Source of the DNA: Macrostomum lignano
Lineage: Eukaryota
NCBI GenBank assembly: GCA_002269645.1
Contig: NIVC01000670.1
Location: 186,001 to 250,000, forward strand
Reading direction: 5' to 3'
DNA length: 64,000 bases
This document shows, in pieces, positions 2,790 to 62,239 of the stretch. Within the stretch, counting starts at the first letter, position 1, and each line of letters begins with the position of its first letter. The notes under the pieces were generated by a model that saw only the letters and a program-made list of their open reading frames with translations, searched no databases and was not told where the DNA came from. Both the position numbers and the translations under genes were made by a program.

Positions 2790-3660
2790 CTCAGACCCGA
2801 GCAATGTGTCTTTGACCCACCCGAGATCCATAGAATGTGTCTGACCCACCCGAGGTCCGTAGAATGTGCCTGACCCACCCGAGGTCCGTAGAATGTGCCT
2901 GACCCACCCGAGGTCCGTAGGATGTGCTTGACCCACCCGAGGTCCGTAGGATGTGCTTGACCCACCCGACGTCCGTAGGATGTGCTTGACCCACCCCCAA
3001 GTTCGTAAGATGTGCCTGACCCACCCCAAGTTCGTAGGATTTGCCTGACCCACCCGAGGTCCGTAGGATGTGCTTGACCCACCCGAGGTCCGTAGGATGT
3101 GCTTGACCCACCCGACGTCCGTAGGATGTGCCTGACCCACCCGAGGTCCGTAGGATGTGCTTGACCCACCCGAGGTCTGTAGAATGTGCCTGACCCATCC
3201 GAGGTCTGTAGAATGTGCCTGACCCACTCGAGGTCTGTAGAATGTGCTTGACCCAACCCGAGGTCCGTAGGATGTGCTTGACCCACCCGAGGTCTGTAGA
3301 ATGTGCCTGACCCAACCCGAGGTCCGTAGGATGTGCCTGACCCACCCGAGGTCCGTAGGATGTGCTTGACCCACCCGAGGTCCGTAGAATGTGCTTGACC
3401 CACCCGAGGTCCGTAGGATGTGCTTGACCCACCCGAGGTCCGTAGGATGTGCTTGACCCACCCGAGGTCCGTAGGATGTGCTTGACCCACCCGAGGTCCG
3501 TAGGATGTGCTTGACCCACCCGAGGTCCGTAGGATGTGCTTGACCCACCCGAGGTCCGTAGGATGTGCTTGACCCACCCGAGGTCCGTAGGATGTACCTG
3601 ACCCACCCGAGGTCATAGAATGTGCCTGACCCACCCCCAAGTTCGTAGGATGTGCCTGAG
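2790..3660. repeat. 29-bp minisatellite (GACCCACCCGAGGTCCGTAGGATGTGCTT)n, about 30 copies
   Basis: Period read directly; the overlapping ORFs repeat every 29 aa. Confidence 0.95.
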
Positions 3661-10187: not shown

Positions 10188-10812
10188 TCACTGCTTCAGA
10201 ACGAGGATCTCAAATTCGTTGCTGCGATGCTCCTGACCTCCCCACGGGAAATAGGCGCAGCCGTGAGGCTCGAACACCTTACCGGCGACCATTTCGCCAT
10301 TGATTTGGCTGCGGCCGATGTAGTAGGGCTGCCTGTCGGCCGAGTAGCCGCCGATCAGGGCGCCACGAGGCACGGGGCGACCGTGGCACCGCTCCCAGGT
10401 GTAGTTGCAGCCAAAACACTGCATGTGGGTGTCGCACAGGATCTCGTAGTCGGAGACAGCGTGCTCCTGACCACCGTAGGAGACGTATGCGGCTTGGTGA
10501 CCCATGGATGCCTTGCCTGCAAAATGGATTTAGCCCAATTGAGCTGCAATTTCATACCTAAAATAAGTAAGTACATGTATGCATACATGTGCAGCCATAC
10601 AAATAAAATATCTCACCAGGAATGAGCTCTCCTGCGTGCTGCGCTCTCGCCACAAAAACTCCATGGCCAACCTGGATGGCGCCGTTCGGAATCTGGCCTC
10701 CTCTGGCCGGGATCCAGCTCAGAGTCACCTGAGGATTGCCGCCGCTTGCACCGTGACCGTGACCGTGACCGCGACCGGGACCGTGACCGGGACCGAGACC
10801 GAGACTGAACAT
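10188..10812 (-). CDS. DM9-repeat lectin-like protein, copy b; exons 10812-10617 and 10516-10188, 174 aa
   Basis: Near-identical to copy a, same intron position, longer Gly-His N-terminus. Confidence 0.92.
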
Positions 10813-12245: not shown

Positions 12246-13432
12246 AGCCCTCCTCCGCATCATCGAGGAGGCGCGCATCCATCAGTCAAGTCTTCATTGA
12301 CTTCCCCCAAGGCTTTCGACTCGTTGGTTCGCGGCGCGCTGCCTCTCGTGCTTCGCGCGTACAAATGTGCGGGAGCAATTGATTTCCGCCATTTTGGTGA
12401 TGTACCAGGACGCAACCGCTTCGGTGATGACGCCAGATGGTCGGACCAATTCAGCACGTCCATTAGGCGTGTTGCAGGGTGACATTCTGGCGCCTTTCCT
12501 GTTTGTGCTGGCATTGAATTGGGTGCTTAGGACTGACCTGCCCAACACGGATGACGCCTTCCTGCTGAGAAGACACACGAGTCGGCGGCACCCGGAGAAG
12601 CGGCTCTCCGTTCTCGGCTACGCTGATGACCTCGTGCTGCTGTCATCGTCGGCTGGAGGCGCTCAGCGTCTGCTGGATGGCCTGACGGCAGCAGCATCGC
12701 AAGTCCGCTTCATGATGAACGCGCGAAATAGGGTAGTAATCTTCACAGCGCCCGATCTGACCTGCCTGCCGAGATCAACTACCGAGACGCTGCCAAAGGC
12801 AATGATGCTTGCCAACTGCCAGCGGTTCCTGTACCTCGGCGGCCTCGTGCCGGACGTTTCCGACGACCTGCATGGTGAGACGACGAGGATTGGCCTGGGC
12901 CGCGTTATGTTCTGTGCTCTCCGTGCTCTCCATTCTGAGGCCCTTGCCTGGATGACGGGTTCAGGGATGTCTGTTTCAGGCAGTCATTGACACTGTCTTG
13001 TAATACGATGCCGAGACCTAGACCCTGACGGACGCCTTGGAGAAGCAGCTGGACGCTGCGCATGCGGTGGTCCAGGCAGCGAGCTGAGGACCAAAGCCGC
13101 GATCTACATGTACACGAAAGCACGCCTGAATTCGGCCTTCTGGACCTGCTGGACGGGCGGCGACTTCGACTGGCTGGCGACGTCATCCGGTCGGGGGCCC
13201 ACCGCCCTGAGGCCGCTGCACGAAGCTGCAGGGACCGCGCAGGTGAGTCCAAGGGCGAAACGGTGAGATATCCTGACAGACTTTTGACCGATGCCATGGC
13301 GCCCCGGACCAAGCTGGGGGTGTGACTTCAATTTCTGAGGGCTACATGTATATGGCCCAGAGACGCGCTCTCTGACTTCCCCCCTTTCTGGCCACTGCGT
13401 GGCTGGCGGGTGAATTACTTTTGTTGTTGTTG
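12246..13432 (+). mobile_element. 5'-truncated RTE-like LINE (RT domain, decayed)
   Basis: KAFDS, GVLQGDILAPFLF and GYADD motifs; (TTG)n tail; 9-bp TSD with one mismatch (AGCCTATCT/ACCCTATCT). Confidence 0.88.
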
Positions 13433-19314: not shown

Positions 19315-19622
19315 TAGAACAGATACATATAGTATAAGTATAAAGTATAAAGCTCAACAGAAATTAAGTATACTTTTTGTGACACTATTGTATATGCAGT
19401 CATATATATACTTCAGTTTTACTGAAAGTAGATACCCAAACAGTTATTAGAAAGTCAACAGTAGGGTAAGTAGTTTCTGTTTCTAATAAAACTTTATCAG
19501 GTCAAACTTATGTGATGGCTGATTTATCTGAGAACACATAAATCATGTAGTTAGTTATAGTAAATTTGAAACAGTGGATTCTAAAGCTTGAATTAGTACG
19601 CATATTGCAGCAGTCGTCAGTC

Positions 19623-22600
19623 ATGACTAGCCTAGACAACATGCTTAGCCGCGGCTCAGTGCGGGCACTCAACAATGGCGAGGACTATCAGAACCCGGTG
19701 CTGAAGGTGCTCGGCCACCGCAAGGTTCCTGGCGGCGGGCAGGACCGCTACCGCCTACTCGTGACAGATGGCATCGATCAGCACTCTTACGTGATGCTGG
19801 GCACCCAGCTCAACTACCTGATCGAGGGCGACCAGCTGCCGCCTGGCACAGTTCTGCAGGTGACAAAGTACGTGCTCAACAATATGAAATCTGACAAGCC
19901 AATCCTGATTGTCATATCGCTAGACATCCTGGGCTCGGGCTCTGTGCCTGATCCTGCCAATAGCGACGCCAATGGCACCGGAGCCCCCTCCGCGCAGCAG
20001 CAGCAGCAGCCGGTGAAGCCTCTCGCCGACAACAACCGGCCGGCCGCGTTCGCCGCTGTCCAGGAGACACCGCCGCGTCCGACAGCCAGCAGCTACAGCA
20101 GCGGTGCGGGCGGCCGCGGGGGAGGCGGCGGTCAGCAGCCAGGCTTCGTGCCGCAGACGCCGCCGCACTCTGGAAGGTCCTTCGGCGGAGGCAGCAGCGA
20201 CCAATCGGCTGGCAGCGGCATTGACACCAGTCGGGTTCGTCCGATCTCATCGCTGAACCCGTATCAGAACAAGTGGACCATCTGCGGTCGGGTGACCCAG
20301 AAGAGTCAGGTGAGGCTGATTACATGGGTCATTGGGTCAGTCTGATCAATCAGCACCATTTAGTTCCTAACTGATAGTGCTACTTACATCAGTAGTGTCA
20401 TTGACATTGCAGCATATCAGCCTACTTTCATCAGTAGTGTCATTGACATAGCAGCATATCAGCCTACTTACATCAGTAGTGTCATTGACATAGCAGCATA
20501 TCAGCCTACTTACATCAGTAGTGTCATTGACATTGCAGCATATAAGCCTACTTAAATCAGTAGCCAGTCACGAGCCCATCTGCAATATCCGCAGGTTCGC
20601 ACCTGGTCAAACAGCCGAGGCGAGGGCAAGCTGTTCAGCTTCGTCCTGACCGACGACAGCAGCGAGATCCGCGTGACGGCCTTCAGAGACGAGGTGGACA
20701 AGTACTTCGACTTGGTGGAGCTGGGCCGCGCCATGTACATCAGCAGGGGCCAGTTGAAGGCGGCGAACAAGCAGTTCAACAACACGCAGAACGAATACGA
20801 GATGGTGCTGAGCAGCGAGTCGCAGCTGCAGCAGTGCGACGATGCCGACGCTGCCGCGGTGCCCGAGATGAAGTTCAACTTCGTGCCGATCGCTCAGCTG
20901 GACACGGTGGAGCCGAACAAGTGGGTAGTTGTGGTAGCTGAGTGGCGCTTTGTCTTTGGCAAGTTCTTGGTGTTGCCGTGCATATATAAGCTCTGTGAGC
21001 TTGTGGGACTCCGTTTGGGGGGCTCCCAAACGAAGGGTCTGTTGCAGTGTTTGGTGGCACTCAGTGTCTGTTGCAGTGTTTGGGCACTCCTTTGTTGCAG
21101 TGTTTAGGCACTCCTTTGTTGCAGTGTTTGGGCACTCCGTGTATGTTGCAGTGTTTGGGCACTCCATGTCTGTTGCAGTGTTTGGGCACTCCTTTGTTGC
21201 AGTGTTTGGGCATTCCGTGTATGTTGCAGTGTTTGGGCACTCCTTTGTTGCAGTGTTTGGGCACTCCGTGTATGTTGCAGTGTTTGGGCACTCCATGTCT
21301 GTTGCAGTGTTTGGGGCACTCAGTGTATGTTGCAGTGTTTGGGCACTCTGTGTCTGTTGCAGTGTTTGGGCACTCAGTGTATGTTGCAGTGTTTGGGCAC
21401 TCAGTGTATGTTGCAGTGTTTGGGCACTCCGTGTCTGTTGCAGTGTTTGGGCACTCTGTGTCTGTTGCAGTGTTTGGGCACTCCGTGTCTGTTGCAGTGT
21501 TTAAGGCACTCCGTGTCTGTTGCAGTGTTTGGGCGCACTCCGTGTCTGTTGCAGTGTTTGGTGGCACTCAGTGTCTGTTGCAGTGTTTGGGCACTCAGTG
21601 TCTGTTGCAGTGTTTGGGCATTCCGTGTCTGTTGCAGTGTTTGGTGGCACTCAGTGTCTGTTGCAGTGTTTGGTGGCACTCAGTGTCTGTTGCAGTGTTT
21701 GGGCACTCCGTGTCTGTTGCAGTGTTTGGGCACTCCGTGTCTGTTGTAGTGTTTGGGCACTCCGTGTCTGTTGCAGTGTTTGGGCACTCCGTGTCTGTTG
21801 CAGTGTTTGGGCATTCCGTGTCTGTTGCAGTGTTTGGGGCACTCTGTGTCTGTTGCAGTGTTTGGGCACTCCGTGTCTGTTGCAGTGTTTGGGCACTCCG
21901 TGTCTGTTGCAGTATTTGGTGGCACTCAGTGTCTGTTGCAGTATTTGGAGCACTCCGTGTCTGTTGCAGTATTTGGAGCACTCCGTGTCTGTTGCAGTGT
22001 TTGGGCACTCTGTGTCTGTTGCAGTGTTTGGGGCACTCTGTGTCTGTTGCAGTGTTTGGGGCACTCCGTGTCTGTTGCGTGTCTGTTGCAGTGTTTGGGG
22101 CACTCCGTGTCTGTTGCAGTGTCTGTTGCAGTATTTGGAGCACTCTGTGTCTGTTGCGTGTCTGTTGCAGTGTTTGGGCACTCCGTGTCTGTTGCAGTGT
22201 TTGGGCACTCCATATCTGTTGCAGTGTTTGGGCACTCCGTGTCTGTTGCAGTGTTTGGTGGCACTCCATATCTGTTGCAGTGTTTGGGCACTCCGTGTCT
22301 GTTGCAGTGTTTGGGGCACTCTGTGTCTGTTGCAGTGTTTGGGCACTCCGTGTCTGTTGCAGTGTTTGGGGCACTCTGTGTCTGTTGCAGTGTTTGGGCA
22401 CTCCGTGTCTGTTGCAGTGTTTGGTGGCACTCAGTGTCTGTTGCAGTGTTTGGGCACTCCGTGTCTGTTGCAGTATTTGGAGCACTCAGTGTCTGTTGCA
22501 GTGTTTGGGCATTCCGTGTCTGTTGCAGTGTTTGGGCATTCCGTGTCTGTTGCAGTGTTTGGGGCACTCCGTGTCTGTTGCAGTGTTTGGGGCACTCAGT

Positions 22601-23989
22601 GTCTGTTGCAGTGTTTGGTGGCACTCAGTGTCTGTTGCAGTGTTTGGGGCACTCAGTGTCTGTTGCAGTGTTTGGGGCACTCAGTGTCTGTTGCAGTGTT
22701 TGGGGCACTCCATGTCTGTTGCAGTGTTTGGGGCACTCCGTGTCTGTTGCAGTGTTTGGTGGCACTCCATGTCTGTTGCAGTGTTTGGGGCACTCCATGT
22801 CTGTTGCAGTGTTTGGGGCACTCCGTGTCTGTTGCAGTGTCTGTTGCAGTGCTGCAGTGACGCAACCAGGCAGAGCCCATGAGGATGCCTACACACGCAC
22901 AACCCCTCCGCAGGTTCGTGGACGTCTGCGGCGTGGTGCACGAGACGCACGACGTGCAGACCATCGTGGGCAAGACCAGCAACCGGGAGATCGCAAAGCG
23001 GGACCTCACGCTGGTGGACAGTAGCGGCTGCTCCGTCCGCTGCACCCTATGGGGCGACGAGGCGGTGAAGTTCAACGGCGAGAAGAAGCCGGTGGTGGCC
23101 GTCAAGGGCGCCAAGGTGTCGGACTTTGGCGGCAGGTCGCTGAGCTCCACCACCAACAGCTGCTTCCTGATCAACCCGTCGATGCCCGAGGCAGACAGGC
23201 TTCGCGGCTGGTACCACATGGAGGGCCAGCAGATGCAGTTCGACACGTTCAGAGGCGACGGCGGAGCTGGCGGCGGTCCGGGCGGCGGAAGCGCCGTCTA
23301 TCGCAACCTGAAGGACTGCAAGGCCGGCGGCTTCGGCACCGGGGACAAGTTCGAGTACTTCAGCTGCCTTGCCTGCATCATTCACATGAAGCGGGAGACG
23401 TGCCTGTACCAGGTGAGTGATAGGCTCTAATTGATTGCCTCTTGGTGCTCTGGCAGCCCCCCGCTGAGCCCCCGGCAACCGCCGCCTTGCAGGCCTGCCC
23501 GAAGCCCGACTGCAACAAGAAGGTGATCGAATTCAATGGCGAATACCGCTGCGAGAAATGCCAGTCCAGCTACCCGAATTTCACCTGGCGATTCCTGCTG
23601 CAGGCGAATCTGGCTGATCACACCGACAACCAGTGGGTGACCTGCTTCCAGGTGAGCTGCTGTCGCCAGTTCTGTGAGCACTGAGTAGTTTATCTGAGTC
23701 AGCATTTCTTATCGCTGCCTCTGCTCATCATCAACAGGACACGGCCGAGAAGCTCCTGGGAGTGACCGCCCAGCAGCTCGGCCAGATGCGCTCGGACGGA
23801 GACGACAAGGGCCAGACAGGCGTGTTTGAGAAGGCCCTGTTCCAGCATCACCTGTTCACCATGCGGGCCAAGATGGAGAACTTCCAGGACGAGATGCGGC
23901 TGCGTGTTGTTGTGCAGGACGTGAAGCAGATGAACTTTGCTGAGGCCGGCCGCCTGTTGGTGAGCCAGATCGAGGCCATGGCCGTGTGA
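19623..23989 (+). CDS. RPA1: Replication protein A 70-kDa subunit, copy a; exons 19623-20309, 20595-20920, 22914-23412, 23493-23651, 23738-23989 (640 aa)
   Basis: RPA70N domain, [28 protein letters not shown] (DBD-A), DBD-B, zinc finger [11 protein letters not shown]...YRCEKC (DBD-C); all GT-AG junctions in frame. Confidence 0.96.
20357..20552. repeat. 42-bp minisatellite in RPA1a intron 1
   Basis: About 4 copies of CCTACTTACATCAGTAGTGTCATTGACATAGCAGCATATCAG, preceded by one unit of the RPA1b-type repeat. Confidence 0.9.
21035..22850. repeat. 27-29-bp minisatellite (GCACTCCGTGTCTGTTGCAGTGTTTGG) in RPA1a intron 2
   Basis: Read directly. Confidence 0.95.
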
Positions 23990-24499
23990 CTGATGCAGTC
24001 ATAAGTTATCATTAAACTATCCCAGTAGCTCTGCTCTTCGTTTTAATGCCCTTCTCAAGTTGAACATGAAACGATTTTTACAAAACCAGTTTTCATAAGG
24101 CAAGCACTTGCCTATTTTTGTAACTAACTTATTAACTTATTTGCAATTTTATTCAGTCGAATATAAAGTGTATTGGGTTTGCATTTAAACGAATGGATTT
24201 CTTATTAATACTTAAGTTAATATTTTCTAAGAATAGGAATCCGCATTTGAAATAGGCGAGCAGTCTTGACTACAAATGTCAATCTCAATAGTCAATAATA
24301 ACTAGGTACTAAGGTACCAGTCAAATAAAATTGTATTTTCGCTAAAACAGCTGATTAAAATAATCGGGTTAACATGTCTGATCGAAATTATTTTTCTTAA
24401 ATTTGTAATTGTCAGAACTTTTTGGTCTTGATTTATTTAGCATAGATTAGCCTGGCAGGTCCGCCTCTATTACACGTACAGTCTCTTACCAGACTTGTT

Positions 24500-24955
24500 T
24501 TTAGCCGATGGGAAACACCGATGGGAAAACGCCGGAGGGAAACGCTGGAGGAGAAATCCCGCCGAGGGGAAACTCCGATGGGGGACGTCGGAAAGGAAAC
24601 GCTGGAGGGGAAATCCCGCCGATGGGAAACGCTGGAGGGGAACACCAGAAGGGAAAGGCTGTAGGGGAAATCCCGCCGATGGGAAACGCTGGAGGGGAAC
24701 ACCAGAAGGGAAAGGCTGTAGGGGAAATCCCGCCGATGGGAAACGCTGGAGGGGAACACTGGAGAGGAACGCTGGAAGGTAAACGCCGGAGGGGAAACGC
24801 ACGCTAGAGGGAAACGCTGGAAGGGAAACGCCGGAAGGGAAACGCAGTAGGGGAAATCTCGTCGAGGGGAAACGCCGGAGGGAAACGCTGGAAGGGAAAC
24901 GCTAGAGGGGAAACGCTGGAGGGAAACACTGGAAGGGAAACGCCGGAGGGGAACA
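24500..24955. repeat. Degenerate G/A-rich tandem repeat (GGGAAACGCTGGAG-like)
   Basis: Read directly. Confidence 0.85.
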
Positions 24956-25308
24956 TTAACACAATGCAAACTTAATGGCGCACACGTGCATTAGGAAGTA
25001 AGGAACTCTATCGTCAGATCACTCACCGCAGCTAAAGTGGCGGAGGGCCCACTCGGACCAGTTGGTCTTCCCCGCCACATCCGACAGTCGGACTCTGGCC
25101 GGCACAGCTCTTTCTAGGCCGCGAGTTGCGGACTCACAAAGACCTCATGCGCCTCTCGGTACGTGAGCAAGTTCTCCATTCTCAGACGAGCCAGAAGAAG
25201 CAAGTGCGTGACCGCAGGGCGAGGCATCCAGAGCAGCTTCTAAGGGTATACATCTGGACAGGACTCAACTTGCGTGCCCAGAACCTCTGCTTGCTGTTCA
25301 AACTTTAA

Positions 25309-25858
25309 TGTCTGTAGATGTACATTTAAACGCAAATCACGCGCTTCTGGACCCTTGCCCTAGGGCAAAGGGCAAAACCCTAGCGTCAGTTGCTAATAAT
25401 AGCAATAGCGCCATACAATCTGACGAAATCGGTCTCGCGCGTAATGGTGCAATGTTTCCTGCCTATAAATGCGGACCCTTACATGCCTCGTTCTGTCAAG
25501 GATTCTTTAAGCTCTGTTCTCTCCAGTAAACGCAGTTCTGCAATCGCCCTATTTCTACCATTGTCCTGACTCAGTTCTCATCCTAGCTAAACCCAGACCT
25601 CTGAGGCTAACACCGTCCTCCCAGCCGACTCACTGAGCCCGGCAGGATCTGCTGACTATTAGTGTCTGAAATCGCAAATCTGCCTGAAGTGCTGTGTTCG
25701 CTCGTCTTTGTTATTGTATTTCGTTCCGACCTCCTGTTGATCCTCACCTCAGTCCCTGAGACCCGAAGGGACTGGTGGCAGCAACTACCAACACTACTAC
25801 TGATAAGTAGGCTCAACCTGAGAACCACAGGTACAACATTGGTGGCAGCGGTGGGATT
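25309..25858 (+). mobile_element. LTR (about 25309-25838) followed by a single tRNA-Leu PBS (25840-25858); internal region missing
   Basis: ...GGTACAACA-T-TGGTGGCAGCGGTGGGATT, complementary to the conserved tRNA-Leu 3' end; TATA-like CTATAAA near 25466; 5' boundary approximate. Confidence 0.7.
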
Positions 25859-27252
25859 TGAAGACCTGCCTGGCCACCTCAAGACAACCCCATGCGAGAA
25901 GCTCAAATACTTCAAGAAGAAAGAATTCGATGAGTAATGCAAGCACCATGGTTTTTTCCAAGTGATTGAATCAGCGGATTAAATAATTGGACTCTGTCTT
26001 TCTTTTATCTTGTAAACTGTACTGTACCATGCAGACACCACTTTGGGGATTATTTATTATTCATAATCTGCAAAATTCACAAACTAGGTTATTAATCTTC
26101 GGCTAAAGTGCCAGGCGCCGCATGATGCATATTCCAGACTTCCTGTTACAAACAGTGCCTTTTCTGCCTACTCATATTAGCTTAGCTTATTGCTCAGAGC
26201 TCGTATAACGCTAATTGGATGAAAGCTTGACTGAATCATGGCCATTCATTATTAACTTGACGCAAGAAGCAAGACTTGACGCTATTTATCTCGCGCTTGC
26301 AATCCTCGAGGCAGCCACCAATCTACATGTACCTGTTGAATCGGTCCGACACAACTACCACTTAGCGAGGCCGACTTGATCCGCACGTTGAGCCTTGCTT
26401 GAAAAACTGCTCGGCTGGGGCAAGGCAGTTGCATTGTTCTCATCAACTCGTGTTTGAACGTTCTTTAGATATCTGAGCTGGCACCCCGAACTAGAAAAGT
26501 AACTTCTAACTCATTGGAACTTACCTTGACGAATTGAGTTTACTCAATTAATCGCTACTTGAATTAAGCAACGAGTTCTTTGTAAATAAATGAATTGCAT
26601 GAATTTTTGCTGCGAAAGATTGTTGCAGAAAAACTTCATTTATCGCTTATTTTACGCTCGTATTTGAAAAGCTGATTTCAAGCTGAAAATTCCTTTAGTC
26701 TTGAAGTCGACTTTGCGTCAAATCAAGCGGAAATGTTCAGATAGAGAGCAGCCGGAGATGCCGACCCCTGCCTTGATGCATTACAATGGGCAGCAAAATT
26801 ATCAGTTAAAGAAAAAAACCATTGCGCTTGTCAAGTTAAGAAACTGATTTACTGCCAGCTATATTGCAAACTGGGCCAAATACATGGATAATATAGTTGA
26901 AACAAACAACCAAAACTACTGCCTTGCATGCAAGAAGATCCACATGGGAAAACTTAGAAATCATGGAATGCTACGCAGGATACTCAAGTAAAATTTGCGT
27001 AGCAAACACATAAAAGGTACGTAAAATATGCATATCGAATCGTCAACAAACTAATTAGGAGGAAGCAATAAAAATGCAGAAAACTACACAGTACGAGTTT
27101 GAAACTCGTAGTACGCTAACCTGCTTTTCTCCAGATTTCGTTATAATACAAAAAATATTTAACACCAAGCCGTCAAATTATTTGTTTTTGAAATGCTACA
27201 AGTTGCAGTTCTGATTCAGCTACTCATCCAGTCCTCATCGCGCTGGCGGGCC

Positions 27253-30200
27253 TCACACGACCATGGCCTCGATCTGGCTCACCAACAGGCGGCCGGCCTC
27301 AGCAAAGTTCATCTGCTTCACGTCCTGCACAACAACACGCAGCCGCATCTCGTCCTGGAAGTTCTCCATCTTGGCCCGCATGGTGAACAGGTGATGCTGG
27401 AACAGGGCCTTCTCAAACACGCCTGTCTGGCCCTTGTCGTCTCCGTCCGAGCGCATCTGGCCGAGCTGCTGGGCGGTCACTCCCAGGAGCTTCTCGGCCG
27501 TGTCCTGTTGATGATGAGCAGAGGCAGAGATAAAAAATTCTGACTCAGATAAACTACTCAGTGCTCACAGAACTGGCGACAGCAGCTCACCTGGAAGCAG
27601 GTCACCCACTGGTTGTCGGTGTGATCAGCCAGATTCGCCTGCAGCAGGAATCGCCAGGTGAAATTCGGGTAGCTGGACTGGCATTTCTCGCAGCGGTATT
27701 CGCCATTGAATTCGATCACCTTCTTGTTGCAGTCGGGCTTCGGGCAGGCCTGCAAGGCGGCGGTTGCCGGGGGCTCAGCGGGGGGCTGCCAGAGCACCAA
27801 GAGGCAATCAATTATAGCCTATCACTCACCTGGTACAGGCACGTCTCCCGCTTCATGTGAATGATGCAGGCAAGGCAGCTGAAGTACTCGAACTTGTCCC
27901 CGGTGCCGAAGCCGCCGGCCTTGCAGTCCTTCAGGTTGCGATAGACGGCGCTTCCGCCGCCCGGACCGCCGCCAGCTCCGCCGTCGCCTCTGAACGTGTC
28001 GAACTGCATCTGCTGGCCCTCCATGTGGTACCAGCCGCGAAGCCTGTCTGCCTCGGGCATCGACGGGTTGATCAGGAAGCAGCTGTTGGTGGTGGAGCTC
28101 AGCGACCTGCCGCCAAAGTCCGACACCTTGGCGCCCTTGACGGCCACCACCGGCTTCTTCTCGCCGTTGAACTTCACCGCCTCGTCACCCCACAGGGTGC
28201 AGCGGACGGAGCAGCCGCTGCTGTCCACCAGCGTGAGGTCCCGCTTTGCGATCTCCCGGTTGCTGGTCTTGCCCACGATGGTCTGCACGTCGTGCGTCTC
28301 GTGCACCACGCCGCAGACGTCCACGAACCTGCGGAAGGGTTGTGCGTGTGTGGGCATCCTCATGGGCTCTGCCTAGTTGCGTCACTGCAGCACTGCAACA
28401 GACACTGCAACAGACACTGAGTGCTCCAAATACTGCAACAGACACTGAGTGCCACCAAACACTGCAACAGACATGGAGTGCCCAAACACTGCAACAGACA
28501 CTGAGTGCCCAAACACTGCAACAGACACTGAGTGCCACCAAACACTGCAACAGACACTGAGTGCCCAAACACTGCAACAGACACTGAGTGCCCAAACACT
28601 GCAACAGACACTGAGTGCCACCAAACACTGCAACAGACACTGAGTGCCCAAACACTGCAACAGACACTGAGTGCCACCAAACACTGCAACAGACATGGAG
28701 TGCCCCAAACACTGCAACAGACATGGAGTGCCCAAACACTGCAACAGACACTGAGTGCCCAAACACTGCAACAGACATGGAATGCCCAAACACTGCAACA
28801 GACACTGAGTGCCACCAAACACTGCAACAGACACGGAGTGCCCAAACACTGCAACAGACACGGAGTGCCCCAAACACTGCAACAGACACGGAATGCCCAA
28901 ACACTGCAACAGACACTGAGTGCCACCAAACACTGCAACAGACACGGAGTGCCCAAACACTGCAACAGACACTGAGTGCCACCAAACACTGCAACAGACA
29001 CGGAGTGCCCCAAACACTGCAACAGACACGGAGTGCCAGAAACACTGCAACAGACACGGAGTGCCTAAACACTGCAACGTACACTGACTGCCCAAACACT
29101 GCAACAGAAATGGAGTGCCCAAACACTGCAACAGACACTGAGTGCCACCAAACACTGCAACAGACACTGAGTGCCACCAAACACTGCAACAGACACTGAG
29201 TGCCACCAAACACTGCAACAGACATGGAGTGCCCCAAACACTGCAACAGACACTGAGTGCCACCAAACACTGCAACAGACACTGAGTGCCACCAAACACT
29301 GCAACAGACATGGAGTGCCCCAAACACTGCAACAGACACTGAGTGCCACCAAACACTGCAACAGACACTGAGTGCCACCAAACACTGCAACAGACATGGA
29401 GTGCCCCAAACACTGCAACAGACACTGAGTGCCACCAAACACTGCAACAGACACTGAGTGCCACCAAACACTGCAACAGACACTGAGTGCCACCAAACAC
29501 TGCAACAGACATGGAGTGCCCCAAACACTGCAACAGACACTGAGTGCCACCAAACACTGCAACAGACACTGAGTGCCACCAAACACTGCAACAGACACTG
29601 AGTGCCACCAAACACTGCAACAGACATGGAGTGCCCCAAACACTGCAACAGACACTGAGTGCCACCAAACACTGCAACAGACACTGAGTGCCACCAAACA
29701 CTGCAACAGACATGGAGTGCCCCAAACACTGCAACAGACATGGAGTGCCCCAAACACTGCAACAGACATGGAGTGCCCCAAACACTGCAACAGACATGGA
29801 GTGCCCCAAACACTGCAACAGACATGGAGTGCCCCAAACACTGCAACAGACACGGAGTGCCACCAACACTGCAACAAGGGAGTGCCCAGACACTGCAACA
29901 GACCCTTCGTTTGGGAGTCCCCCAAACGGAGTCCCACAAGCTCACAGAGCTTATATACGCACGGCAACACCAAGAACTTGCCAAAGACAAAGCGCCACAC
30001 AGCTACCACAACCACCCACTTGTTCGGCTCCACCGTGTCCAGCTGAGCGATCGGCACAAAGTTGAACTTCATCTCGGGCACCGCGGCAGCGTCGGCATCG
30101 TCGCACTGCTGCAGCTGCGACTCGCTGCTCAGCACCATCTCGTATTCGTTCTGCGTGTTGTTGAACTGCTTGTTCGCCGCCTTCAACTGGCCCCTGCTGA

Positions 30201-32056
30201 TGTACATGGCGCGGCCCAGCTCCACCAAGTCGAAGTACTTGTCCACCTCGTCTCTGAAGGCCGTCACGCGGATCTCGCTGCTGTCGTCGGTCAGGACGAA
30301 GCTGAACAGCTTGCCCTCGCCTCGGCTGTTTGACCAGGTGCGAACCTGCGGATATTGTAGATGGTAAGTAGGTGGTAAATTGGGAACTGAATGACACTAC
30401 TGATGTAAGTAGCACTATCAGTTAGGAACTGAATGACACTGTTGTTGTTAAACGGGGGTGGGAGGAGAAGCGCTGCCCGCGGATCAGCCCTAAGGGGGCT
30501 CTGACGCATGGATCTTGCTGTGGGCCATACTACCAGGGGCTTTAAGCCCGAGAGGACACTATTGGAACCAGAGCTCAGGACTCTGGGGAGAGCATGGAGC
30601 ATTGGAGCTACCAACCCAAGCCTATGGACTAAGACACCGGCAAACCAAAAGTGGAATCTGGGACGGTGCTAGGACCGAGTCCATCCAGGCCACCACCCAG
30701 CAGACAAGTCCCGGGAGTGCGCGAAAAAAGAATTGGAATGAAAAATGTTTGGGTTACTACTGAAAGCAGTCCTAGAGCAGGGAATATCCTGAAGTCTACG
30801 GAAATGCTTGATAATTGGAGTGAGTCTAGAAGGCTGAATGACACTACTGATGTAAGTAGCACTATCAGTTAGGAACTGAATGACACTACTGATGTAAGTA
30901 GCACTATCAGTTAGGAACTGAATGACACTACTGATGTAAGTAGCACTATCAGTTAGGAACTGAATGACACTACTGATGTAAGTAGCACTATCAGTTAGGA
31001 ACTGAATGACACTACTGATGTAAGTAGCACTATCAGTTAGGAACTGAATGACACTACTGATGTAAGTAGCACTATCAGTTAGGAACTGAATGACACTACT
31101 GATGTAAGTAGCACTATCAGTTAGGAACTGAATGACACTACTGATGTAAGTAGCACTATCAGTTAGGAACTGAATGACACTACTGATGTAAGTAGCACTA
31201 TCAGTTAGGAACTGAATGACACTACTGATGTAAGTAGCACTATCAGTTAGGAACTGAATGACACTACTGATGTAAGTAGCACTATCAGTTAGGAACTGAA
31301 TGACACTACTGATGTAAGTAGCACTATCAGTTAGGAACTGAATGACACTACTGATGTAAGTAGCACTATCAGTTAGGAACTGAATGGTGCTGATTGATCA
31401 GACGGATCCAATGAACCATGCAATCAGCCTACCTGACTCTTCTGGGTCACCCGGCCGCAGACGGTCCACTTGTTCTGATACGGGTTCAGCGAGGAGATCG
31501 GACGAACCCGACTGGTGTCAATGCCGCTGCCAGCCGACTGGTCGCTGCTGCCTCCACCGAAGGACCTTCCAGAGTGCGGCGGCGTCTGCGATATGAAGTT
31601 AGCGCCACTGCTGAAGCCACTGTGTGTCGGGCGCGGCGGAGTCTCCTGGAGGGTGGTGAACCCGGGCGGTCGGTTGCTGTCGGCGAGAGGCTTCTGCGTT
31701 GAGGCCTCTGGCTCTATCAGAGACTGGTCAGGCTCGGACCCCATGCCCAGGATTTCAAGCGATATGCCAATCAGGATCTGCTTGTCCGCCTTGGTCTTAT
31801 TAATAACGTACTTAGTCAGCCTCAGAACTGTGCCAGGCAATAACTCGCCATTTTCAATCAGGTAGTTGAGCTGGGTGCCCAGCAACATGTAAGAGTGCTG
31901 CTCAACTCCGTCAGTTACAAACAGACGGTAGCGGTCCTGCCCGCCGCCAGGAACCTTGCGGTGGCCGAGGACCTTCAGTACTGGGTTCTGGTAGTCCTCG
32001 CCATTACTGAGAGCCCGCACGGAGCCGCGGCTGAGCATGCTGTCTAGGTCAGACAT
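27253..32056 (-). CDS. RPA1: Replication protein A 70-kDa subunit, copy b; exons 32056-31433, 30345-30020, 28328-27830, 27749-27591, 27504-27253 (619 aa)
   Basis: Same domains; exons 2-5 have the same lengths as in copy a (326, 499, 159, 252 nt). Confidence 0.96.
28385..29900. repeat. 27-29-bp minisatellite in RPA1b intron 2 (reverse complement of the RPA1a array)
   Basis: Read directly. Confidence 0.95.
30385..31385. repeat. 42-bp minisatellite in RPA1b intron 1 (about 14 copies, interrupted)
   Basis: Unit TGAATGACACTACTGATGTAAGTAGCACTATCAGTTAGGAAC. Confidence 0.95.
30441..30833 (-). mobile_element. Short non-LTR retroposon (SINE or LINE 3' end) inserted in the minisatellite
   Basis: 12-bp TSD CTGAATGACACT; (AAC)n tail on the minus strand. 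Confidence 0.7.
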
Positions 32057-32498
32057 CAGTGCTTTGTTGACTGTAAGTGTTGGGTCAGCTTTAGCTGGTT
32101 ATATCACTTGTTGTTCCGCCATAGCCTCAGATATGGCTATAAGAAGTTACAGATATGGAGACTTTAGGCAAAACATATGGATATGGTTAGGCCTATGCTA
32201 TGGGAATACATTTTCTATACCTAGTTCTTGTATTGAGCGATTATTAGTCGCTAAATAACTGAGACTTAAATTAAGACTTAAAAGACAATTGGCACCCTCG
32301 ATTGCATGGGTGGGCATACAGCAGTAGGCCTAGTTTAAATGAATGAATATTGAAAATTTCAAAGCTTTTGTGAGGGGGGGGGGGCTTTTAAGTCCCTTGG
32401 GTTGGAGACTTAAACAATAGGGATTTTTGCTATTATATACACATCGTGTGATTGGAATGGTAGGGGGCTAGGGGCTAAAGTTAAGATGAATACTTATT

Positions 32499-46707: not shown

Positions 46708-49303
46708 CGGCAGACGACCGCGGCCGGGGCGGTGTCGGCGTACTGATCCGACCGCGCCTTCGGCAGAGCGTGCACTGCGCTTCGTTGTCGACGCGACTGA
46801 TGCGGGTCGACCTGTGCCTGCACGCCCGCTGCATCCGGCTTTTCTGCGCGTATGCACCCACAGCTGCTCACCCCGAGGAGGCGATCGTGCCTTCTTCGAC
46901 TTCCTGGCTGGGCAGCTGGAAGAGGTGCCAAACCGCGACACGCTGGCGGTGCTCGGAGACCTGAACGCAGTTCCACGGGGGTCCGAGCGCTCGCCCTTTG
47001 TCGCGGGACGCGAGAACGCCAACACCGATGCACTGGAGGACCTGCTTGACAGGCTGGACCTGGTGTCCGCAAACACCCAGTTCCCTGCCCGCCTGGTTAC
47101 CTTTGCGTGCTGCTAGAGAAGGCGACAAAACGCACGCGGGCGGAACGCCACGAGGAGACTGGCGCAATTCGATCATGCGCTGGTTCGCACTCGCGAGCGC
47201 CGCCGCGTCACCAACTGCGACACCATGGCTTCGCTGGCTCTCCGGTCAGACCATCAACTTCTGCTCTGCGACTTGCGGCTCCAAGACCAGCTCTATCGAC
47301 AGATAAAGCACTGGCTCTGTCGAACACCCGCGTGAAGCGTCAATCGCGGGCGCCTTCGTCGGCGCGCTTGGAGAGCAGCGCGAGGCGGAGTATTCCGACA
47401 TCAGCACCGCAGTTAGAGTTAGAGCCTCTGCGGAGCAGACGGTCCCGCAGATGCGGCCAGCAAAAAAATCGCGGCCTGTCTGGCAGAGCGACCCGACCAT
47501 CAGGCAGGCGCGGCTCAACATCGAGCAACTCCGCAGAAACCGTCCCACGGGCGACGCTGCAGACGCGTTTGAGCACCTTCTAGACGAGCGGCAGCAGGCC
47601 GCTGTCGACGACGCCATTAGGTCCATTACTGCAGCCGGCCCCGACGTGAAGAGCCGCGCAGTGTGGACGGCCGTCCGGACTCTGACGGGGCGCAGAAAGC
47701 GCGTGGCGCTGAACCTGGCCGGCGACACCCCAGAGGAGCGCAGGAATGAATTGCGCGACTTCTTCGCCGGCATCGTGAACGCGCCTGCGTCGCCGCTGCC
47801 CGCCAGCTTTGCGCTCCTACTGGACACGCTGCTCCCAGCTGAGGAGGACTTCTGCACCAGACCATTCACCACGGAGGACGTTGTGCTGTTCGCTCGGAAA
47901 ACATCAGGCGGCAAGGCGCTCGGCCCTGACGGCTCCGCTGTGTGGCCTCTCAGGTCACAGGCGTCATAAACCGCGTGCTGGCCGGCGCTCCTGTGCCCTC
48001 CGAGTGGACCGTCGCGCACATTGTGCCGATCCTGAAGAAGGCAGGGACAACGTGGAAAGAAGACCACCACGGGATCTCGATGATGTCCTGCACAGCGTAG
48101 CTCTTTAACCGGCTGCTGCTCGATCGTCTGCAGCCGGTGCTGAACCCGTACCTGCAGAACGAATTCCGGCCGCAACGCGGTACAGTGACACAGATCTTCG
48201 CACTCCGCCGTGTCATCGAGGTCATCGCCGTGTCCCCTTCGTCCTTCGAGCCTACCGGGTCCCGCAGCAGCTAATCGACGCGATACTCGAGCTGCTGTGG
48301 TGACGGCGGACGGCCTGTCTAACCTGTTCGACACTTCGTCAGGAGTTCTGCAGGGCGACACACTAGCGCTCCTCTTCGTGCTGCTGCTTGACTGGGTGCT
48401 TCGGACCGCACTTCCCTCGGCTGACGACGGCTTCCTGCTGCGCAGACACATCGGTCGCAGTCACGGCGAAAAGCGCCTGAGTGTGCTTGGATACGCCGAC
48501 AACCTCGCCCTCCTGTCCTCGTCCGTTGAAGGCGCCCAGCGCCAGATCGACAGGCTGGTCGAGATGGCATCGAGAGTCGGTCTGGTTGTCAACACGCTGA
48601 AGACCCAGGTGCTGACTGTGCCGGCCGACATCACAGCGGACATGACATGCCACGGTGCAGACGGGCAGACGACCAAGCTCGCACGCTGCCAGCGGTTCAC
48701 CTACCTCGGCGGTCTGGTGTCCCACGTGGAGGAAGACCTCCGGCGGCGCAGAGGACTTGCCTGGGCTTCCTTCCGTTCGATCCGGGCCGTCATCCAGTCT
48801 AAAGCGCTGCCCGACCGCCAGAGGGCTCGGCTGTGGCAGGCGGTGGTCGAAACCGTCCTGCTATATAATGCTAAGACATGGACGCTGACGACTACGCTGG
48901 AGCGGCAGTTGGACTCGGTGTACTCAGGGCTGCTCCGTGCAGCCTTTCGAGCTGACGAGGGCGTCGGGACCGAGGCCCTGTACGATCGGGCCTAGCTGCA
49001 ACGCCCGTCCACCATCCTGCGTCGGCGGCGACTTCAACTGGCGGGCTACGTGATCCTGGCCGAGGGCTACTGCGCCCAACCCGTTCAAGATGTCCTGCTG
49101 CTCACCTTGCAGGGCCCGTTCAGGCGGGGTCAGGCCCAAACCCGTCGATACGTGGACTGCCTGCTGTGCGACGCTGGGGCGCCCGACACTGCCAACGGGG
49201 CGGACTTCGTCCGCTCTCAGGCTCAGCGGCGTGCCCTCTGACGCAGCCTGCTCTAACTGCGGCCTTGCATGCGGGGCTGCGTAATTTGTTGTTGTTGTTG
49301 TTG
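46708..49303 (+). mobile_element. 5'-truncated RTE-like LINE (partial APE endonuclease and RT), decayed
   Basis: GGVG, AYAPT, GDLNA and LDH endonuclease motifs; GVLQGD and GYADN RT motifs; (TTG)n tail; 11-bp TSD TATGCTTAAGT. Confidence 0.92.
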
Positions 49304-56664: not shown

Positions 56665-56864
56665 TGACCGACTAAAACTGTCTAGCTAACTAACTAACAA
56701 TTCAACTAACTAACTATCTAACTAACTATCTAACTGACTAACTGACTAACTATCTAGCTAACTAACTAACTAAGTACCTAGTTACAAGTACCTAAGTAAG
56801 TAAGTAAGTAAGTAAGTAACTAACTAACTAACTAACTAACTAAGTAAGTAACTAACTAACTAAG

Positions 56865-56905
<41 letters not shown>

Positions 56906-56906
56906 G

Positions 56907-56939
<33 letters not shown>

Positions 56940-56996
56940 CTAACTAAATAACTGACTAACTGACTAGCTAACCAACTAACTAACTAACTAACTAAG

Positions 56997-57033
<37 letters not shown>

Positions 57034-57095
57034 GACTAACTGACTAAACTATCTAACTAACTAGCTAACCAACTATCTAACTTCCTACCTAACTA
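56665..57095. repeat. (ACTA)n/(AAGT)n microsatellite
   Basis: Read directly. Confidence 0.95.
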
Positions 57096-57929
57096 AATGG
57101 GTAAACTCGATCAGCCATTAAAGCAATGTAGCTCTTAGCTGAACGCCGCATTGCCAAAAATGTATTGCATAATTTTGTTATATAGTTATCATTACTATAC
57201 TAAAAGTAGTATGTTGACAACTTCCAAATAAAGCAGCACTGTTTGGAGTGCATTGATTGCATGAATTGAGAAGAATAAACTAACTAAACAAAACAGATAG
57301 TTTTAAACAATAACTGCTGAAAAACATAACAAGAAAAATGCCAGCAGACAGCGGCAGGAGATCAAAGGGCAACAGGTCTTATATTGTTTCAACTTGTAAT
57401 ATTCTTGGTGCTTGAAGTTTTTCCATAAATGCTAAAAGAAGTTCAGATTACTTGACATTTTTCGTCATACTGTAGGAAAAATAAAATACTAACGCTGACA
57501 GCAAAAGTAAATAAAAAATAAAAAAGTTATTTATTAAAAAGTTTGCACTAATGTAGCGGAATAGCAAGGGAATAAGAGTAATAATAACTACTTTTTTTAA
57601 AATACCCTTCCAATATCTTTAACGTTTCAGAAATTTTTGATAATATTTTCTGTGACAATTCACCGACATTCTGTATGACACATTCCCCTGTCATGTCTAC
57701 AAACAAGTGTTTACCAATTTTATAACAACTTTGACTATTCCCCAACTAGTGAAATACCTCCTCCTAAGTAATTTCTGCAAAAAAGTATTGTTTTCTGAAT
57801 TACGTCTCTAGACCTTGGAGAACTCCTTTAACGACTATTTGACTTCGTATAATTGACTACTAAACACACATAAATGAACGATAAACTTTAAAGAAAGTCG
57901 GAATAATTCCACTCAGTCAGCCCGGTCAA

Positions 57930-61974
<4,045 letters not shown>

Positions 61975-62239
61975 TTTTCTTTAACTGCTGATTGATTGCT
62001 TCAATTGGCTTTTTTTCTGGTAAAATTCAGCCAAACTAAAAACCAATGCAGCAATACGAAATGCATGGTGCACCAGTCTGATGATAATAATCCTAATGAT
62101 ACATTGTTATGAGCTTACTGTGTATTATGTGCATGCCGGTGAATATTGATCACTACTGAGTTCAGAGAATTTACATGCTCTGAATAACTTTTGTGTAAAA
62201 ATCCATTACTATGCTGAATCAAGAATGGAGGTACTGGTG

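What the first reader, a model, noticed from the sequence alone, without database searches (positions are those of the whole stretch)
19623..32056. RPA1 palindrome: homogenised ssDNA-binding core, diverged protein-interaction domain
Seen: from [12 protein letters not shown] to the stop codon the two inverted genes are almost identical, including introns 3 and 4 (1 and 3 differences) and silent sites; homology ends at the stop. In contrast, RPA70N has many substitutions and the linker differs by 21 aa (poly-Q/Gly-rich in a). Known: RPA70N is the checkpoint and repair docking domain; palindrome arms can undergo gene conversion. Inference: arm-to-arm conversion preserves the DNA-binding core while two N-terminal adaptors specialise, giving alternative RPA complexes.
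Basis: partly seen in the sequence, partly recalled or inferred. Interest (0 to 1): 0.72.

Follow-up and report, generated by a model that had tools for sequence, protein, structure and literature searches.

The report
Inverted RPA1 gene pair, partly homogenised
The flatworm Macrostomum lignano carries two tail-to-tail copies of the DNA-replication gene RPA1 whose DNA-binding parts are kept almost identical by copying between the copies while their old, diverged N-terminal docking domains persist; this is a clear new example of a well-known process, and distinct roles for the two copies are not shown.

Summary
The window is Macrostomum lignano contig NIVC01000670.1. It holds two intact, convergent 5-exon RPA1/RPA70 genes, A (+, 640 aa) and B (-, 619 aa), 3,263 nt apart.

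Codons 1-177 (RPA70N plus linker) have dS 0.61, 104 substitutions and 63 nt of indels. Exons 2-5 have dS 0.015. Introns 3 and 4 differ at 1 and 3 sites. Homology runs only from the ATG to the stop codon.

The same pair lies on two further contigs, which I take to be the three published subgenome copies. Across the six genes, the N-part has 99 fixed A-versus-B sites. The roughly 1,830 alignable nt downstream have one, plus 26 variants shared across gene types, 5 of them private to one locus. This shows repeated arm-to-arm gene conversion and rules out an assembly artefact.

The 5' limit of conversion sits at the indel-rich linker, so loss of homology explains it without invoking selection.

Both N-domains are under purifying selection (dN/dS 0.21). 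Published data place both transcripts in the same "stringent neoblast" class. B differs at two conserved groove residues (human M57 and L87 equivalents).

Conversion is strongly supported. Specialised adaptors remain plausible but unproven. This is a new member of a known kind, of moderate interest.

The parts
19623..23989 (+). RPA1 copy A (640 aa), NCBI BOX15_Mlig015525g2. Exons 19623-20309, 20595-20920, 22914-23412, 23493-23651, 23738-23989.
   Evidence: Gene model built and 100% identical to P0001. Pfam finds Rep-A_N, OB, REPA_OB_2 and Rep_fac-A_C. Best solved structure is human RPA70, E 6e-159.
27253..32056 (-). RPA1 copy B (619 aa). Exons 32056-31433, 30345-30020, 28328-27830, 27749-27591, 27504-27253.
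   Evidence: Gene model, identical to P0004 (UniRef A0A1I8HTM7). It has the same four Pfam domains as copy A.
19623..20153 (+). Unconverted part of A: RPA70N (codons 1-110) plus the Gln/Gly-rich linker (codons 111-177).
   Evidence: dS 0.61 and dN/dS 0.21 (domain) or 0.55 (linker). 99-100 fixed A-versus-B sites across the three loci.
31589..32056 (-). Unconverted part of B: RPA70N plus a linker 21 aa shorter than in A.
20154..20594 (+). Transition zone in A: exon-1 tail (codons 178-229, dS 0.115) and intron 1, which holds 4.4 copies of the beta-type 42-bp repeat.
   Evidence: The 5' end points of the exchanges differ between the three loci.
30346..31588 (-). Transition zone in B: exon-1 tail and intron 1, which holds 13.2 perfect copies of the alpha-type 42-bp repeat and a B-specific insert of about 400 bp.
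   Evidence: The insert is present in B and absent from A at all three loci.
20576..23989 (+). Homogenised tract of arm A: from the last 19 nt of intron 1 to the stop codon.
   Evidence: Inverted repeats I2 and I1 are 99% complementary. There are no fixed A-versus-B sites in this tract.
27253..30364 (-). Homogenised tract of arm B.
21037..22840 (+). 27/28-bp minisatellite in intron 2 of A (about 1.8 kb).
   Evidence: Intron 2 length differs in all six gene copies, from 1,091 to 1,993 nt.
28402..29903 (-). The same minisatellite in intron 2 of B (about 1.5 kb).
23990..27252 (.). Unique 3,263-nt spacer holding the two unrelated 3' UTRs and a degenerate tandem repeat at 24504-24955.
   Evidence: The two halves share no similarity. 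The spacer is conserved in the same orientation in L001 and L002.
19609..19622 (+). Inferred trans-splice acceptor (AG at 19609-19610) and 12-nt 5' UTR of A.
   Evidence: The annotated protein P0001 begins QSSV-M immediately after TTGCAG. The transcript is flagged TRANSSPLICED. This is an inference.
32057..32072 (-). Inferred trans-splice acceptor (AG at 32072-32071) and 14-nt 5' UTR of B.
   Evidence: P0003 begins NKAL-M just after TTACAG. The transcript is flagged TRANSSPLICED. This is an inference.

Best explanation
An old inverted (tail-to-tail) duplication of the RPA1/RPA70 gene predates the recent genome multiplication of Macrostomum lignano by roughly 20-fold or more in synonymous divergence. 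The region from codon 178 to the stop codon, introns included, is repeatedly homogenised by non-reciprocal repair copying between the two arms (non-allelic gene conversion). Conversion tracts end on the 3' side where homology ends, at the stop codon, because the 3' UTRs are unrelated. On the 5' side they end inside the exon-1 tail or intron 1. They never enter the first 177 codons, which are 17-19% diverged and interrupted by 63 nt of indels, too dissimilar for strand exchange. Once that part escaped conversion, the escape reinforced itself. Both genes are intact, trans-spliced and co-expressed in proliferating neoblasts. The animal therefore makes two RPA70 isoforms with the same ssDNA-binding and trimerisation core but different N-terminal OB domains (78% identical) and linkers. 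Shown here: the gene structures, the divergence gradient, repeated conversion, constraint on both N-domains, and expression of both copies. Inferred: the repair mechanism, the homology barrier as the cause of the boundary, and any functional difference between the isoforms.
For: Gene models and the dS step from 0.61 to 0.015. Introns 3 and 4 and the flanks of intron 2 are homogenised too, so selection on codons cannot explain the identity. The same B/A pair occurs on contigs NIVC01000240.1 and NIVC01002391.1. Mlig_3_7 is known to hold about 85% of the genome in three paralogous copies with 1.1% CDS divergence (PMC10733133). In the 1,322-nt core, within-locus A-B distances (8, 3, 10) are no larger than between-locus distances (6-15). 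Site patterns: 99 fixed A-versus-B sites in the N-part against 1 downstream, and downstream also 5 variants private to one locus but shared by its A and B, plus 21 other cross-type shared variants. Intron 1 is a mosaic: A of L001 carries B-type alpha repeats and a B-like exon-1 tail, and B of L002 carries A-type beta repeats and an A-like 3' intron end. The boundary abuts a 33-nt indel. RPA70N has dN/dS 0.21, and within-type changes since the subgenome split are 6 synonymous to 1 non-synonymous. Both transcript clusters are TRANSSPLICED and 'Neoblast, stringent' (PMC5816591 Suppl. Table 2), and the identifiers are mapped to gene types.
Against: There is no population or long-read data. Some cross-type shared sites could reflect exchange between homeologous loci or sorting of old polymorphism rather than separate within-locus events. 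One fixed difference (codon 220, I/V) persists inside the converted zone, and a B-specific 400-bp insert persists in intron 1, so homogenisation there is patchy. The homology-barrier explanation of the boundary cannot be separated from selection against converted N-domains with these data. GC3 is higher in the core (0.88) than in the N-part (0.72-0.77), which fits biased conversion but equally fits codon bias.
Confidence: 0.85

Rival explanations
1. The two RPA70N domains and linkers have specialised for different partner sets, giving two functionally distinct RPA complexes. Selection against converted N-domains, not just loss of homology, keeps the boundary where it is, while conversion serves to preserve the shared core.
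For: The pair has been retained for a long time (dS 0.61), and all six copies are intact. Both N-domains are under purifying selection. Copy B has replaced the otherwise invariant Met at the human-M57 position with Leu and has Thr at the human-L87 position. Both are groove contacts for HelB, BLM, RMI1, WRN and ETAA1 peptides. The linker differs by 21 aa. Animals usually have a single RPA1 gene (PMC4731521 abstract).
Against: 13 of 15 named groove residues, including the R31, R41 and R43 equivalents, are identical in A and B, so differences are not enriched in the groove (2 of 15 against 24 of 110 overall). Divergence from outgroups is symmetric, 9 sites against 8. There is no sign of positive selection (dN/dS 0.21). 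Both transcripts fall in the same expression class at similar levels. Retention for dosage would give the same sequence signature.
Confidence: 0.3
2. One single long conversion or partial re-duplication replaced the core of one copy shortly before the genome multiplication. Nothing has happened between the arms since. The shared variants among the six copies come from exchange between homeologous loci or from sorting of ancestral polymorphism.
For: All three loci share the same outer limit at codon 177/178. Core divergence between A and B (0.2-0.8%) is close to the divergence between loci (0.5-1.1%).
Against: Five sites carry a variant found only in the A and B copies of one locus. Locus L001 has an A-B distance of 3, against 8-15 to all other copies. 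The three loci have different inner end points and different directions of transfer in exon-1 tail and intron 1. These patterns need several separate A-B transfers.
Confidence: 0.08
3. Assembly artefact: a fold-back chimera, or two haplotypes joined head to head.
For: Mlig_3_7 is a draft assembly of a neopolyploid, repeat-rich genome with known copy-number errors.
Against: The same arrangement occurs on three contigs with different intron lengths and private substitutions. The arms are separated by a unique 3.3-kb spacer and flanked by unrelated sequence. The N-parts are 17-19% diverged. A-type and B-type proteins were also predicted from the independent ML2 assembly. Two distinct transcripts exist.
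Confidence: 0.02
4. The whole gene duplicated recently, and the N-terminus then evolved very fast under relaxed or positive selection, without any gene conversion.
For: The N-domain and linker are the least conserved parts of RPA70 in general.
Against: The excess divergence is at synonymous sites (dS 0.61 against 0.015), with dN/dS of only 0.2-0.55. The flanks and UTRs share no homology, as expected for an old duplication. The mosaic patterns require transfers between copies.
Confidence: 0.02

Closest known systems
Region-restricted gene conversion between adjacent paralogues, such as mammalian TLR1/TLR6 (PMC2077338) and ruminant CEACAM1 paralogues (PMC7042247). From my own knowledge, also the human gamma-globin pair, where the conversion tract is bounded by a simple repeat in IVS2.
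   Same: Neighbouring paralogues in which one block, introns included, is kept near-identical by conversion while another block stays old and diverged. Tract end points lie at repeats or at the edge of homology.
   Different: The genes here are inverted and convergent rather than tandem. The family is RPA1. The process can be followed in three recently separated subgenome copies within one genome.
Chromosome palindromes with arm-to-arm gene conversion, as on primate Y and X chromosomes (review PMC3403216).
   Same: Inverted arms around a unique spacer, with arm-to-arm identity far higher than the age of the duplication predicts, maintained by intrachromosomal conversion.
   Different: The scale is different: arms of 4.4-4.8 kb holding a single gene, against tens of kb to Mb. 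Only the inner about 3.4 kb of each arm is homogenised. The setting is a hermaphrodite's ordinary chromosome, not a non-recombining sex chromosome. No inversion of the spacer was seen among the three loci.
Plant RPA1 paralogue families, RPA1A-E (PMC4731521).
   Same: More than one RPA70-type large subunit in one organism, which allows alternative RPA complexes.
   Different: As far as I know, plant paralogues have diverged along their whole length and are functionally separated by genetics, and no concerted evolution of their core has been described. Here the cores are identical, only the N-domain and linker differ, and no functional separation is shown.
Human alternative RPA containing RPA4 (from my own knowledge).
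   Same: The concept of a second RPA complex formed by swapping one subunit for a paralogue.
   Different: A different subunit is involved (the RPA2 paralogue), and the origin was by retroposition. There is no palindrome and no gene conversion.

Membership tests
RPA70 / RPA1 large subunit of replication protein A | Four-domain architecture: N-terminal OB (Rep-A_N), DBD-A, DBD-B and DBD-C. | tested here: met
   Both copies match PF04057 (63.7 and 58.8 bits, cut-off 26.7), PF01336, PF16900 and PF08646 (157.8 and 157.9 bits). Copy A aligns end to end with human RPA70 (8rk2), E 5.7e-159.
RPA70 / RPA1 large subunit of replication protein A | Aromatic ssDNA-stacking residues of DBD-A and DBD-B (human F238, F269, W361, F386) and the C4 zinc motif of DBD-C. 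| tested here: met
   In the alignment the four aromatic residues are conserved (VTAF, NKQF, TLWG, SDFGG). CPKPDC-x12-CEKC aligns with human CPTQDC-x13-CEKC. This region is identical in A and B. The residue numbers come from my own knowledge.
RPA70 / RPA1 large subunit of replication protein A | Basic and hydrophobic partner-binding groove in RPA70N (human R31, I33, R41, R43, M57, T60, Q61, R81, I83, L87, K88, R91, V93, I95, M97; PMC10479964). | tested here: met
   The equivalents of R31, R41 and R43 are Arg in both copies. R81 and R91 are Lys in both. The hydrophobic positions are kept, except in copy B, where M57 becomes L and L87 becomes T (L87 is M in copy A).
RPA70 / RPA1 large subunit of replication protein A | Forms a heterotrimer with RPA32 and RPA14 and binds ssDNA. 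| not testable with these tools
   This needs biochemistry. It is inferred only from the conservation of DBD-C.
Palindrome or inverted duplicate under arm-to-arm gene conversion | Inverted arms on one molecule, separated by a unique spacer. | tested here: met
   The arrangement is reproduced on three contigs.
Palindrome or inverted duplicate under arm-to-arm gene conversion | Arm identity, non-coding sites included, far above that expected from the age of the duplication. | tested here: met
   dS is 0.015 in the core against 0.61 in the unconverted part. Introns 3 and 4 are 96.5-98.8% identical.
Palindrome or inverted duplicate under arm-to-arm gene conversion | Independent copies or lineages show paralogues grouping by locus or as mosaics rather than by gene type. 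| tested here: met
   Downstream of codon 177 there is 1 fixed A-versus-B site, 5 locus-private shared sites and 21 other cross-type shared sites. The A-B distance in L001 is 3, against 8-15 to the other copies.
Functionally specialised (sub- or neo-functionalised) paralogue pair | Different expression domains or conditions. | tested here: not met
   Published tables put both transcript clusters in identical categories (Irradiation, S/G2/M, Neoblast stringent; not Germline) at similar logCPM values. One caveat: reads from the identical 3' two-thirds of the transcripts cannot be assigned to a copy.
Functionally specialised (sub- or neo-functionalised) paralogue pair | A sequence signature of changed function in the diverged domain. 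| tested here: inconclusive
   dN/dS is 0.21, so there is no positive selection, and divergence is symmetric. Copy B is nonetheless altered at two conserved groove residues and at two other conserved positions, L46F and V97G.
Functionally specialised (sub- or neo-functionalised) paralogue pair | Different binding partners or different loss-of-function phenotypes. | not testable with these tools
   This needs pull-downs or ITC and copy-specific RNAi.

The most novel reading that the evidence does not exclude
M. lignano neoblasts use two RPA complexes that share one conversion-maintained ssDNA-binding core but carry distinct RPA70N and linker modules with different partner preferences. For example, copy B, altered at the human M57 and L87 groove positions, might favour a different subset of checkpoint or helicase clients. 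Selection, not only the homology barrier, would then keep conversion out of the N-terminal 177 codons. This would be a modular 'constant core, variable adaptor' design for an essential replication factor in an animal.
Probability: 0.25. Interest if true: 0.6.

Novelty: new member of a known kind. Interest (0 to 1): 0.36.

Why it matters
Animals generally have one RPA1 gene, so a long-retained pair with identical DNA-binding cores and different docking domains is unusual. It sits in a transgenic, RNAi-amenable stem-cell and regeneration model, where the contribution of RPA70N to checkpoint and repair signalling could be tested. The three subgenome copies give an unusually clean view of gene conversion in progress: its direction, its tract end points in minisatellites, and its stop at a homology barrier. 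On the practical side, RNA-seq, RNAi and CRISPR designs for Mlig RPA1 must target the first 530 nt or the UTRs to tell the two copies apart. The process itself, partial concerted evolution of adjacent paralogues, is textbook.

Tried and rejected
1. Assembly artefact. Rejected because the pair occurs on three contigs with private differences and both protein types appear in a second assembly.

2. Fast protein evolution of the N-terminus without conversion. Rejected because of the dS gradient and the homogenised introns.

3. A third RPA1 locus that donated one N-terminus. Only A and B types were found among M. lignano proteins.

4. Spacer inversion by crossover between the arms. Not seen, because the spacer is colinear in all three loci.

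5. A search for A and B orthologues in other Macrostomum species. The full-length search showed only M. lignano above 50% identity. Two searches with the N-terminal 218 aa and 111 aa returned nothing, not even the query's own protein, so they are uninformative.

6. A literature search for a prior description of the pair. None was found: RPA1 appears only in a gene list, and the identifier is not in any main text. The Nature Communications genome paper's held supplements have no entry.

7. Enrichment of A/B differences in the RPA70N groove. Not found: 2 of 15 groove residues differ, against 24 of 110 overall.

8. Structure prediction was not run. The tool returns no coordinates, so it could not map substitutions better than the alignment to human RPA70N.
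Full report
WHAT IS THERE

The window is 100% identical to Macrostomum lignano assembly GCA_002269645.1 (Mlig_3_7), contig NIVC01000670.1. Locus L003 equals window 9611-33989.

The finding covers two convergent genes. I built both models from ORFs and splice sites.

- Copy A lies on the + strand, with exons 19623-20309, 20595-20920, 22914-23412, 23493-23651 and 23738-23989. It encodes 640 aa.
- Copy B lies on the - strand, with exons 32056-31433, 30345-30020, 28328-27830, 27749-27591 and 27504-27253. It encodes 619 aa.
- All eight introns are GT-AG and sit at identical positions in the two genes.
- Both proteins have the full RPA70 architecture: Rep-A_N, DBD-A, DBD-B and DBD-C.
- Copy A aligns over its whole length with human RPA70 (8rk2, E 6e-159). 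The DNA-stacking aromatic residues and the zinc motif are conserved.
- Copy A is identical to NCBI BOX15_Mlig015525g2. Copy B is identical to UniRef A0A1I8HTM7.

CHECK OF THE OBSERVATION

| Segment | Result |
|---|---|
| Exon 1 | 104 mismatches and 63 gap columns, a 21-aa difference entirely in the Gln/Gly-rich linker of A |
| Exons 2-5 | 5 differences in 1,236 nt |
| Intron 3 | 1 difference |
| Intron 4 | 3 differences |
| Codons 1-177 | dS 0.61 |
| Codons 178-229 | dS 0.115 |
| Exons 2-5 | dS 0.015 |

The step falls exactly at QTPPHSG (codon 178 of A), directly after a 33-nt indel. Neither the 5' flanks nor the 3' flanks show any similarity, so homology runs only from the ATG to the stop codon. 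At the exon-1 divergence rate, the probability of so few differences downstream is about 1e-99.

- Intron 1 is only partly homogenised. It contains two related 42-bp minisatellite types, and in B an insert of about 400 bp.
- Intron 2 holds a 27/28-bp minisatellite of 1.5-1.8 kb.

IS IT REAL?

Two more contigs of the same assembly carry the same convergent B/A pair: NIVC01000240.1 (L001) and NIVC01002391.1 (L002). The exons have identical lengths, but the intron lengths and some substitutions are private to each contig.

- Published analysis found about 85% of the Mlig_3_7 assembly present in three paralogous copies, with 1.1% divergence in CDS (PMC10733133).
- The between-locus divergence measured here matches this: 4-8 differences in 531 nt and 6-15 in 1,322 nt.
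- I therefore take the three contigs to be the three subgenome copies.
- A-type and B-type proteins were also predicted from the independent ML2 assembly.

A fold-back or haplotype misjoin is therefore excluded for practical purposes.

GENE CONVERSION

Six gene copies (A and B at each of three loci) allow a direct test.

In codons 1-177:

- There are 99-100 fixed A-versus-B sites.
- No variant is shared by the A and B copies of a single locus.

In the roughly 1,830 alignable nt downstream (exon-1 tail, intron ends, exons 2-5, introns 3 and 4):

- Only one site is fixed between types (codon 220, I/V).
- Five variants are found only in the A and B copies of one locus.
- A further 21 variants are shared across types in other combinations.
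- 23 sites are singletons.

In the 1,322-nt core, the A-B distance within a locus is 8, 3 and 10. Distances between loci are 6-15. L001 stands out as freshly homogenised.

The direction and the 5' end point of transfer differ by locus:

- In L001, copy A has a B-like exon-1 tail and B-type alpha repeats, while copy B has an A-like start of intron 1.
- In L002, copy B has A-type beta repeats and an A-like end of intron 1.
- In the window, the latest tract begins 19 nt before exon 2.

Several independent, non-reciprocal transfers are therefore needed, some of them after the subgenomes separated. The spacer has the same orientation in all three loci, so no crossover-type inversion is visible.

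Because the introns are homogenised, codon-level selection cannot be the cause. GC3 is higher in the core (0.88) than in the N-part (0.72-0.77). This fits GC-biased conversion but equally fits codon bias.

WHY THE BOUNDARY SITS WHERE IT DOES

- On the 3' side, tracts stop where homology stops. The two 3' UTRs are unrelated, as expected for a duplication with dS 0.6.
- On the 5' side, no tract in any locus crosses codon 177. Upstream of it the sequences are 17-19% diverged and broken by three indels (18, 12 and 33 nt).

My preferred explanation is a mechanical homology barrier. Once the less constrained N-domain and linker had diverged, strand exchange could no longer extend into them. The highly conserved core stayed similar enough to keep converting.

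This is an inference. Selection against converted N-domains would leave the same pattern.

THE FUNCTIONAL CLAIM

Both N-domains are under purifying selection.

- dN/dS is 0.21 between A and B.
- Changes within each type since the subgenome split are 6 synonymous to 1 non-synonymous in codons 1-110.
- Against 19 outgroup RPA70 proteins, the 24 amino-acid differences in codons 1-110 are polarised symmetrically. A is closer to the outgroups at 9 sites and B at 8.

I compared the groove residues defined in the human RPA70N-peptide structures (PMC10479964).

- 13 of 15 are identical in A and B, including the equivalents of R31, R41 and R43.
- Copy B has Leu at the otherwise invariant human-M57 position.
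- Copy B has Thr at the human-L87 position, where copy A has Met.
- Copy B also carries L46F and V97G at conserved positions.

This is a hint, not an enrichment of differences in the groove.

Expression data come from Grudniewska et al. 2018, Supplementary Table 2 (PMC5816591).

- The table lists two separate transcript clusters.
- MligTCv3c-18885.1 contains Mlig015525.g1, which is A-type.
- MligTCv3c-18885.2 contains Mlig021815.g1, Mlig007287.g1 and Mlig032294.g2. The first two are the B genes of L002 and L001. The third is presumably the window's copy B.
- Both are flagged TRANSSPLICED.
- Both are depleted after irradiation, enriched in S/G2/M cells and classed 'Neoblast, stringent'. Neither is classed 'Germline'.
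- Levels are similar: logCPM at 0 h is 4.1 for A and 5.0 for B.

Specialised adaptors remain possible, at about 0.25-0.3, and are unproven. Retention for dosage fits the data equally well.

COMPARISON WITH WHAT IS KNOWN, AND NOVELTY

Partial concerted evolution of neighbouring paralogues is well documented, for example in TLR1/TLR6 (PMC2077338) and the CEACAM genes (PMC7042247). From my own knowledge it also occurs in the gamma-globin pair. Arm-to-arm conversion in palindromes is also well known (PMC3403216).

Multiple RPA1 paralogues are known from plants, whereas animals usually have one (PMC4731521). I found no paper describing this pair. The genes themselves are already in public annotation.

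I rate this a new member of a known kind. It is a neat and unusually well-resolved case, of practical relevance for anyone working on RPA in this model, and it does not change any concept.

LIMITS

- There were no reads, no population data and no sequences from other Macrostomum species.
- The two short-query protein searches failed for technical reasons.
- The trans-splice sites are inferred from the annotation starts.
- RNA-seq assignment between the two copies is ambiguous over the identical 3' two-thirds of the transcripts.

Noticed in passing
window 21037-22840 and 28402-29903; also L001 and L002: A 27/28-bp minisatellite (GTCTGTTGCAGTGTTTGGGCACTCCGT) fills intron 2 of all six RPA1 copies. 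Intron 2 length differs in every copy, from 1,091 to 1,993 nt. Each repeat unit contains a TTGCAG acceptor-like motif. The array produces long spurious ORFs in several frames.
   Followed up: partly
window 20380-20563 and 30834-31386; L001 and L002 intron 1: Intron 1 carries two related 42-bp repeat types, alpha and beta. The 13.2 alpha copies in the window's copy B are 100% identical, which suggests a very recent expansion. In L001 copy A and in L002 copy B, alpha and beta arrays lie side by side. This marks exchange breakpoints inside the arrays.
   Followed up: yes
window about 30420-30833 (intron 1 of copy B): A non-repetitive insert of about 400 bp is present in intron 1 of B and absent from A at all three loci. 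It has no other copy in the window. Its origin (transposable element or not) was not determined.
   Followed up: partly
window 20280-20282 and 31460-31462 (codon 220 of A): This is the only fixed A-versus-B difference downstream of codon 177 (Ile in A, Val in B). It persists in all three loci even though flanking sites have been converted in L001. This could be chance, patchy repair or selection.
   Followed up: no
L002 10001-15845 (protein P0005, BOX15_Mlig021815g1): The deposited protein lacks the seven residues DTVEPNK at the exon 2/3 junction, although the exon-2 DNA is full length (326 nt). This looks like an annotation or mapping quirk rather than a real difference.
   Followed up: no
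window 24504-24955 (spacer): A degenerate tandem repeat with a period of about 27-57 bp and 68-77% matches lies in the spacer between the two genes. It creates proline/serine-rich pseudo-ORFs on both strands.
   Followed up: no
window 606-1484 (+); about 10188-10812 (-); 12367-12990 (+); 48210-48995 (+): Neighbouring features: an ORF matching the C-terminal part of Hyccin (PF09790, E 2e-16); an annotated DM9-domain gene (from the gene table); and two weak reverse-transcriptase fragments, below Pfam's cut-off, that suggest decayed retroelements.
   Followed up: partly
window 2812-3659 and 56682-64000: There are many further minisatellite arrays, with units of 29, 20, 19, 37 and 22/43 bp and (CTAA)n and (GACA)n runs. 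The array running off the window end at 62489-64000 has strong GC skew. This is typical of this repeat-rich genome.
   Followed up: no
tool behaviour: Protein searches with 218-aa and 111-aa N-terminal queries returned no hit at all, not even the 100% identical M. lignano protein found with the full-length query. Absence of hits from short queries in that tool should therefore not be read as absence of homologues.
   Followed up: no
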